Assembly (NCBI RefSeq): GCF_006345805.1
Contig: NW_021823739.1
Coordinates: 1-21,567 of the forward strand
Length of the DNA stretch: 21,567 nucleotides
Origin: Octopus sinensis
Taxonomy: Eukaryota
Direction of reading: 5' to 3'
Below the pieces are notes generated by a model, which was given only the letters and a program-made list of their open reading frames with translations, was not told the DNA's origin and made no database searches. The translations under genes and the position numbers were made by a program. Below, piece by piece: positions 12,645 through 12,790 of this stretch (positions within the stretch are counted from its first letter, which is position 1; every line of letters starts with the position of its first letter).

Positions 12645-12790
12645 CTCACTACATACTGATCATAGCAGAGACAGTGCAGTTTGGGGCTGCTCTTGGACAG
12701 TTGGTAGACATCGGGGATTGGTAAATAAGTGAAAATCCGTAACAAGAGAGCATCAGGCAACTGAAGCAGATTCAGACTGGGCGCAGCCAT
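12645..12790 (-). CDS. First coding exon of an F-box protein gene (SCF substrate adaptor; class unresolved)
   Basis: Translates MAAPSLNLLQLPDALLLRIFTYLPIPDVYQLSKSSPKLHCLCYDQYVV+AG, matching the F-box pattern L..LP..LL..IF.YL...D...LS.....L..L..D. Kozak-like AAG-ATG-G, in-frame TGA upstream (12806-12808), canonical donor AG|GTGAGT at 12645/12644 (phase 2). Confidence 0.85.

What the first reader, a model, noticed from the sequence alone, without database searches (positions are those of the whole stretch)
12645..12790. Hidden F-box gene start missed by the ORF track
The unspliced frame stops after 49 codons, so it is absent from the track, yet the F-box motif, start context, upstream stop and donor all agree. 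The N-terminal F-box ending KLHCLCYD recalls FBXL18-like KLAALCLD (from memory), but orthology is unproven. If the gene is real, the 12.6 kb to its left is largely intron, and the start is wedged between a SINE multimer and a 2-kb polypurine/polypyrimidine tract.
Basis: partly seen in the sequence, partly recalled or inferred. Interest (0 to 1): 0.7.

Follow-up and report, generated by a model that had tools for sequence, protein, structure and literature searches.

The report
First exon of octopus FBXL18 gene
The 146-base stretch is the real first coding exon, encoding the F-box, of the octopus version of FBXL18, a ubiquitin-ligase subunit; public octopus annotations already contain it, so it is an ordinary feature.

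Summary
On the minus strand, 12790..12645 reads ATG plus 48 codons, and a perfect donor (GAG|GTGAGT) starts at 12644. The unspliced frame stops at codon 50. The peptide passes Pfam's curated cut-offs for F-box (31.9 bits, E 1.1e-7) and F-box-like. It is 48/48 identical to the N-terminus of the annotated Octopus vulgaris "F-box/LRR-repeat 18" protein and 47/48 to the O. bimaculoides model XP_014772717.1. The window is collinear with the O. vulgaris locus. There the identical exon is joined across a 25,432-bp phase-2 intron to exons encoding the family-specific LRR_FBXL18 domain, so window 1..12644 is all intron. Intron position and phase are the same in Argonauta and in a clam. RNA-derived contigs from another cephalopod are joined at the homologous base. 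Substitutions against Argonauta are 27 synonymous to 7 non-synonymous. The exon was hidden only from a bacterial-style ORF list. It is already known and of low interest. The one mildly interesting extra is the 2-kb purine-rich tract upstream, which is probably partly the 5' leader, as in the other cephalopod's transcripts.

The parts
12645..12790 (-). Coding part of exon 1 of the FBXL18 orthologue: ATG (12790-12788), 48 full codons and the first two bases (AG) of codon 49. It encodes the F-box.
   Evidence: Pfam F-box 31.9 bits; 48/48 identical to O. vulgaris P0007; 27 synonymous against 7 non-synonymous differences from Argonauta.
12636..12647 (-). 5' splice site GAG|GTGAGTCGG. The exon ends at 12645, the intron GT is at 12644-12643, and the intron is phase 2.
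   Evidence: Sequence. The site is identical in O. vulgaris L001. AG|GTGAGT lies at the same position in Argonauta and AG|GTGCAG at the same position and phase in Mercenaria. Logan transcripts stop resembling the genome exactly after this AG.
1..12644 (-). First 12.6 kb of intron 1, about half of it. It is filled with SINE/TE copies and microsatellites, and no further FBXL18 exon lies in it.
   Evidence: tblastn of P0001 finds only exon 1. The window is collinear with L001 22335..10147. Exon 2 of L001 starts at 35579, giving an intron of 25,432 bp.
12791..12900 (-). Proximal 5' untranslated leader (inferred). It has in-frame stops at -18 and -27 and is alignable with the transcribed leader of a related cephalopod.
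   Evidence: This stretch is identical to O. vulgaris for about 85 nt upstream of the ATG. Blocks such as AACTCTTCAG...AAGTGTGT are shared with Argonauta and with Logan transcript L002.
12800..15000 (-). Purine-rich tract of about 2.1-2.2 kb (about 85% A+G on the gene strand) made of degenerate 45- to 300-bp tandem units. It is the promoter region and probably part of the 5' UTR.
   Evidence: A like tract of about 1.8 kb is present in O. vulgaris. It is weaker in Argonauta, where only the proximal ~600 bp are purine-enriched (67-72%). In the related cephalopod at least 571 nt of 72% purine leader is transcribed.
11566..12445 (-). Array of 4-5 head-to-tail tRNA-derived SINE-like units of about 185 bp, 200 bp inside intron 1. 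Only the 12445-12255 copy keeps the 5' head.
   Evidence: period 185, 2.1 copies at 11589-11977; blastn of the unit against the window. Further copies lie at 924-1077, 1678-1831 and 7264-7444.

Best explanation
[quoted passage not shown] It supplies the start codon and the whole F-box, the ~40-residue module that docks the protein onto Skp1 in an SCF (Skp1-Cul1-Rbx1) ubiquitin ligase. The exon is spliced from the GTGAGT donor at 12644, across an intron of about 25 kb of which the window holds the first 12.6 kb. The acceptor belongs to a ~0.9-kb second exon, and eight or more further exons follow; together they encode the FBXL18-type leucine-rich-repeat substrate-binding domain. Shown here: the exon, its donor, its F-box HMM match, its identity to annotated octopus FBXL18 models, collinearity with that locus, purifying selection, and a conserved intron position. 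Inferred: use of this splice site in this animal, Skp1 binding, ligase function, and a transcription start inside the upstream purine-rich tract.
For: Pfam scores the peptide as F-box at 31.9 bits and F-box-like at 29.9 bits, both above the curated cut-offs. An exhaustive HMMER search gave P0001 (714 aa) with 69% identity over residues 1-49 of both proteins, E 4e-13. P0001 carries PF19729 LRR_FBXL18 at E 4e-66. Its relatives are named F-box/LRR-repeat protein 18 in Octopus vulgaris, Argonauta hians, Mercenaria and many vertebrates. The O. vulgaris model starts with the same 48 residues, followed by S, which is AG plus the T of exon 2. The window is collinear with O. vulgaris OX597840.1 over more than 18 kb, and the exon and its immediate flanks are identical. 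At that locus exon 1 is 10001-10146 and exon 2 starts at 35579 after a long pyrimidine run and CAG. Intron position and phase are conserved in Argonauta and the clam Mercenaria. Three intronless RNA-derived contigs from another cephalopod carry the exon-1 homologue fused to the rest of the ORF, with an in-frame stop at -15. Against Argonauta there are 27 synonymous and 7 non-synonymous differences, distributed over codon positions as 9/0/25. Exon 1 is the only non-repeat stretch of the window conserved with the Argonauta locus. The N-terminal alignment shows the family's F-box pattern, including K(L/F)xxLCxD in place of the usual Trp-containing end. For function, mammalian Fbxl18 is an SCF subunit that ubiquitylates Fbxl7 (PMC4669792, found).
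Against: No RNA from this species was available, so use of the 12644 donor rests on gene models, conservation and another species' transcripts. The rest of the gene is outside the window. The first word-index protein search found nothing, but this was a limit of the tool, because exact matches turned up. The public octopus models are themselves imperfect downstream: the O. vulgaris C-terminus is truncated and the O. bimaculoides model has internal errors. Neither problem touches exon 1.
Confidence: 0.96

Rival explanations
1. It is a chance short ORF in repeat-rich non-coding DNA that merely resembles an F-box.
For: It has only 49 codons, lies between repeats, and the first homology search gave no hit.
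Against: The Pfam E-value is 1e-7, above the curated cut-offs. The peptide is 48/48 identical to an annotated protein. The substitution pattern is that of a coding sequence, 27 synonymous to 7 non-synonymous with no second-position changes. The donor is conserved in three molluscs.
Confidence: 0.005
2. It is a duplicated or decaying copy of the FBXL18 first exon (a pseudo-exon at a paralogous site), not the working gene start.
For: The later exons are not in the window, so integrity of the whole gene cannot be checked here. The genome is full of repeats.
Against: The window is collinear with the single annotated O. vulgaris FBXL18 locus over more than 18 kb on both sides of the exon. The exon, donor and proximal leader are base-for-base identical to that locus. 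The frame, ATG and donor are intact.
Confidence: 0.02
3. The exon is real, but it is not the first exon, or not the true start: translation begins in an upstream exon, or transcription starts at a distant non-coding exon spliced to the CTCTTCAG at about 12826.
For: An acceptor-like ctcttcag lies 37 nt upstream of the ATG and a donor-like GTG|GTAAGA 41 nt further up. Vertebrate FBXL18 proteins have about 25 extra N-terminal residues.
Against: In-frame stops lie at -18 and -27. All four cephalopod proteins and the clam protein start within a few residues of this Met. The related cephalopod's transcripts run colinearly through the homologue of this upstream stretch, with no splice, and have an in-frame stop at -15.
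Confidence: 0.05

Closest known systems
Octopus vulgaris 'F-box/LRR-repeat 18' gene model (P0007; assembly GCA_951406725.2, OX597840.1) and O. bimaculoides XP_014772717.1 (P0008)
   Same: The first 48 residues are identical to P0007 and 47/48 identical to P0008. Exon-1 DNA, the donor and the proximal leader match the O. vulgaris locus exactly, and the surrounding 18 kb is collinear.
   Different: The window is not the same sequence as that assembly. Identity counting substitutions only is 95-99% in the non-low-complexity blocks and 88-92% in the polypurine and other repeat tracts, and there are many indels in microsatellites. It therefore comes from another individual or a sister taxon of the O. 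vulgaris group.
Vertebrate FBXL18 (human/mouse Fbxl18, SCF substrate receptor; PMC4669792)
   Same: The architecture of the orthologous proteins matches: an N-terminal F-box followed by Pfam LRR_FBXL18. The F-box ends in K(L/F)xxLCxD and lacks the usual Trp.
   Different: Identity over the whole protein is only about 27%. Vertebrates have a ~25-residue N-terminal extension. In the shark, the first intron lies 10 codons further on and in phase 0. Nothing is known about substrates in molluscs.
SKP2 F-box (solved with Skp1, e.g. 1fs1, 1fqv)
   Same: It is the best match among solved structures. LPDxLLLxIF..L..P is shared.
   Different: The match is weak (E 0.03-0.17) and concerns the F-box fold only. 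SKP2 is a different FBXL family member.

Membership tests
F-box domain (Pfam PF00646 / PF12937) | Profile-HMM score above the curated gathering threshold | tested here: met
   PF00646 31.9 bits (cut-off 20.5) and PF12937 29.9 bits (cut-off 24.3), covering residues 8-46.
F-box domain (Pfam PF00646 / PF12937) | Conserved L-P and hydrophobic core positions that pack against Skp1 | tested here: met
   LPDALLLRIFTYLPIPD aligns with SKP2 LPDELLLGIFSCLCLPE and with FBXL18 SDEILLxIL..VP..D.
F-box domain (Pfam PF00646 / PF12937) | Physical binding to Skp1 and assembly into an SCF ligase | not testable with these tools
   This needs pull-down or co-expression.
FBXL18 orthologue group | F-box followed by the family-specific LRR domain (Pfam PF19729 LRR_FBXL18) in the same protein | tested here: met
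   The domain is not inside the window. At the collinear O. vulgaris locus the identical exon 1 belongs to a model carrying PF19729. P0001 scores E 4e-66 against PF19729.
FBXL18 orthologue group | Closest relatives are FBXL18 proteins rather than other F-box families | tested here: met
   the only strong hit in 1.84 billion representatives is P0001. All 27 relatives found with P0001 carry PF19729, and those to which a source gives a family name are called F-box/LRR-repeat protein 18.
FBXL18 orthologue group | Shared gene structure (position and phase of the first intron) | tested here: met
   the position and phase 2 are the same in O. vulgaris, Argonauta and Mercenaria, each followed by a ~0.9-kb exon 2. 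They are not shared with the shark, where the intron lies 10 codons later in phase 0.
FBXL18 orthologue group | Transcript joining this exon to exon 2 in this species | not testable with these tools
   No octopus RNA contig across the junction was found. P0032/L008 is a genomic exon-2 contig. Only a related cephalopod's transcripts, L002-L004, show the join.

The most novel reading that the evidence does not exclude
The 2-kb purine-rich tract directly upstream of the ATG may be more than junk beside the gene. It could be a lineage-conserved, largely transcribed 5' leader or promoter of cephalopod FBXL18. Another cephalopod transcribes at least 571 nt of 72%-purine leader. The tract could then regulate the gene, for example through triplex-forming H-DNA at the promoter, or through short upstream ORFs (six uATGs in the last 600 nt) and purine-binding proteins acting on translation.
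Probability: 0.2. Interest if true: 0.3.

Novelty: already known. Interest (0 to 1): 0.08.

Why it matters
It matters little beyond annotation. It shows that a short eukaryotic first exon is invisible to a prokaryote-style ORF list, yet can be recovered from motif, Kozak context and donor alone. It also fixes where the gene begins in this window. The biology it points to is an SCF-FBXL18 ligase conserved from molluscs to vertebrates, already implied by existing gene models. Nobody has studied FBXL18 substrates in invertebrates, but this window adds nothing to that question.

Tried and rejected
1. The word-index homology search with the 49-aa peptide found nothing. This was a false negative of the index, since exact matches exist.
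2. An exact-product look-up of the 49-aa ORF found nothing on record.
3. tRNA and Rfam scans of the window found nothing. The SINE heads are too degenerate to be called.
4. I looked for later FBXL18 exons in the window by listing open frames and by tblastn with P0001. Only repeat-derived frames and noise appeared.
5. Pfam scans of eight other longer window ORFs gave no hit above cut-off. These ORFs are translations of TEs or low-complexity DNA.
6. I searched for an octopus transcript across the exon 1-2 junction using the last homology search. It returned only a genomic exon-2 contig.
7. I tried to name the species behind the Logan runs SRR6517992, SRR30931882 and SRR30931884 through the literature and found no paper. 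From identities it is a cephalopod outside the Octopus+Argonauta pair.
8. PDB sequence searches gave only weak F-box/LRR matches, to SKP2 and FBXL17, and no solved FBXL18.

Full report
**Observation**

Read on the minus strand, window 12790..12641 is ATG GCT GCG ... GTA GTG AGG TGA. This translates to MAAPSLNLLQLPDALLLRIFTYLPIPDVYQLSKSSPKLHCLCYDQYVVR*, which is 49 codons and then a stop.

- The stop is part of a perfect 5' splice site, GAG|GTGAGT. The last exon base is 12645 and the intron GT is 12644-12643. The exon therefore ends after two bases of codon 49, which makes the intron phase 2.
- The start context is GAGAAGATGG, with A at -3 and G at +4.
- In-frame TGA and TAA lie 18 and 27 nt upstream.
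- Pfam scores the peptide as F-box (PF00646, E 1.1e-7, 31.9 bits against a curated 20.5) and F-box-like (PF12937, 29.9 bits against 24.3) over residues 8-46.

**What it is**

A word-index search with the peptide found nothing. An exhaustive HMMER pass over 1.84 billion representatives then returned one strong hit, P0001. It is 714 aa, 69% identical over residues 1-49 of both proteins, with E 4e-13.

P0001 carries the family-specific Pfam domain LRR_FBXL18 (PF19729) at E 4e-66. Its relatives are annotated F-box/LRR-repeat protein 18 in Octopus vulgaris, Argonauta hians, the clam Mercenaria and many vertebrates.

The O. vulgaris model (P0007) begins with exactly the window's 48 residues and then continues SSLHLSCFHEMSKD. 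The O. bimaculoides model XP_014772717.1 differs at one residue. Argonauta differs at seven aligned residues and has one extra residue.

An alignment of N-termini shows the family's F-box.

**Locus**

The O. vulgaris gene lies on OX597840.1 and was fetched as L001, with the gene at 10001-64705.

- The window is collinear with L001 in reverse: window 1..18887 corresponds to L001 22335..4085.
- Identity counting substitutions only is 95-99% in the non-low-complexity blocks and 88-92% in the polypurine and other repeat tracts.
- The exon, about 85 nt upstream of it and about 50 nt of the intron are identical.

The window therefore comes from the same locus in another individual or a sister taxon of the O. 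vulgaris group.

In L001, exon 1 is 10001-10146. Exon 2 starts at 35579, after a long pyrimidine run and CTGCAG. AG plus T gives the Ser at residue 49, and the intron is 25,432 bp.

No later FBXL18 exon is detectable in the window. Window 1..12644 is therefore the first half of intron 1.

**Independent support that the exon is coding and spliced here**

1. Against Argonauta, the 48 codons differ by 27 synonymous and 7 non-synonymous changes (pS 0.82, pN 0.06), distributed over codon positions as 9/0/25. Against the Logan cephalopod, dN/dS is 0.14.
2. Exon 1 is the only non-repeat sequence of the window that is still alignable with the Argonauta locus.
3. The donor sits at the same codon and in the same phase in Argonauta (AG|GTGAGT) and in the clam (AG|GTGCAG), followed in each by a ~0.9-kb second exon. 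In a shark the first intron lies 10 codons later, in phase 0.
4. Three ~3-kb contigs from three sequencing runs of another cephalopod carry an uninterrupted 714-codon ORF, so they derive from RNA. Their resemblance to the genomic sequences ends exactly after the AG of the donor, and an in-frame stop lies at -15.

I could not obtain a transcript from the octopus itself. The one extra contig found (P0032/L008) is genomic exon 2.

**How it works**

By homology, the exon supplies the Skp1-docking F-box of a substrate receptor of an SCF ubiquitin ligase. The LRR_FBXL18 domain, encoded downstream and outside the window, binds substrates.

In mammals Fbxl18 ubiquitylates Fbxl7 (PMC4669792), and several other substrates have been reported. 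The closest solved F-box is that of SKP2, and it shares LPDxLLLxIF..L..P.

Skp1 binding and ligase activity of the octopus protein are inferred, not shown.

**Surroundings**

- The intron begins with about 200 nt of unique and microsatellite sequence. An array of 4-5 head-to-tail ~185-bp SINE-like units follows at 12445-11566, in the gene's orientation. Only the first unit keeps the tRNA-like head.
- Upstream of the ATG, the gene strand is 83-86% purine for about 2.1 kb (12800-15000). A second such tract lies at 15800-16600.
- O. vulgaris has a like tract of about 1.8 kb. In Argonauta only the proximal ~600 bp are purine-enriched (67-72%).
- The related cephalopod's transcripts carry at least 571 nt of 72%-purine leader contiguous with the ATG.
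- The 110 nt before the window's ATG align colinearly with that leader. The transcription start is therefore probably inside the purine tract. This is an inference.

**Rivals**

- A chance ORF is excluded.
- A paralogous pseudo-exon is very unlikely, given the collinearity and the intact signals.
- An upstream coding exon is excluded by the in-frame stops. An upstream non-coding exon is unlikely, because the related transcripts run straight through the homologous stretch.

**Verdict**

The feature is real and correctly interpreted. It is already present in public annotation for O. vulgaris, O. bimaculoides and Argonauta. It was hidden only from a length-thresholded ORF list, so its novelty is nil and its interest is low.

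Noticed in passing
window 12800-15000 (gene strand = minus); L002 1-571: The purine-rich tract upstream of the ATG is shared with O. vulgaris (about 1.8 kb) and, more weakly, with Argonauta. In another cephalopod, at least 571 nt of 72%-purine sequence is the transcribed 5' leader of the FBXL18 mRNA. The window's last 600 nt before the ATG hold six upstream ATGs with ORFs of 1-25 codons.
   Followed up: partly
L001 (O. vulgaris) 62043-64705; proteins P0007, P0008: The public octopus models look imperfect downstream of exon 1. P0007 (655 aa) ends in ...LLSMIQTKPPCLVDQPFPFTTH instead of the conserved ~80-residue C-terminus ending SRVSVKPVDW. XP_014772717.1 lacks about 60 residues after LIR and carries a ~60-residue insert that looks like translated intron.
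   Followed up: no
L001, L005, L006: The same ten-coding-exon gene spans 54.7 kb in O. vulgaris and 13.2 kb in Argonauta. Intron 1 is 25.4 kb in O. vulgaris, about 2.5 kb in Argonauta and about 6 kb in the clam. This illustrates repeat-driven intron expansion in Octopus.
   Followed up: partly
window 1-436, 2967-3413, 3765-4238, 17085-17459, 18393-18782, 19904-20318: There are many copies, on both strands, of a ~400-bp interspersed element. Its translation repeatedly gives ...RRHLPK.P.SGTEP.TMWLVSKLLTTQPLL. The element is also scattered through the O. vulgaris locus. It explains most of the long ORFs in the ORF list.
   Followed up: no
window 5576-6169: A 139/278-bp tandem repeat lies inside intron 1 (4.3 copies, 82-91% match).
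   Followed up: no
window 19492-19787: A 296-bp segment is 97% identical to a non-syntenic place in the O. vulgaris locus (L001 24480-24775). Its minus-strand ORF ends ...LRNAMMDREVWRSMV, which from memory resembles the C-terminal tail of LINE ORF2 proteins. It has no Pfam hit.
   Followed up: partly
window 2276-2767 and 17773-18097: Two copies of another repeat share the translated motif CTRLQSDLA.FLQLDALPN. They have no Pfam hit.
   Followed up: no
L005 1-2048 (Argonauta): In Argonauta an ORMDL-family gene lies about 8 kb upstream of FBXL18 on the opposite strand. No trace of it appears in the 8.8 kb upstream of the exon in the window.
   Followed up: no
The word-index protein search reported no candidate for a 49-aa query, although proteins with an exact 48-residue match are in the same database. 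Short queries can be false negatives there.
   Followed up: yes
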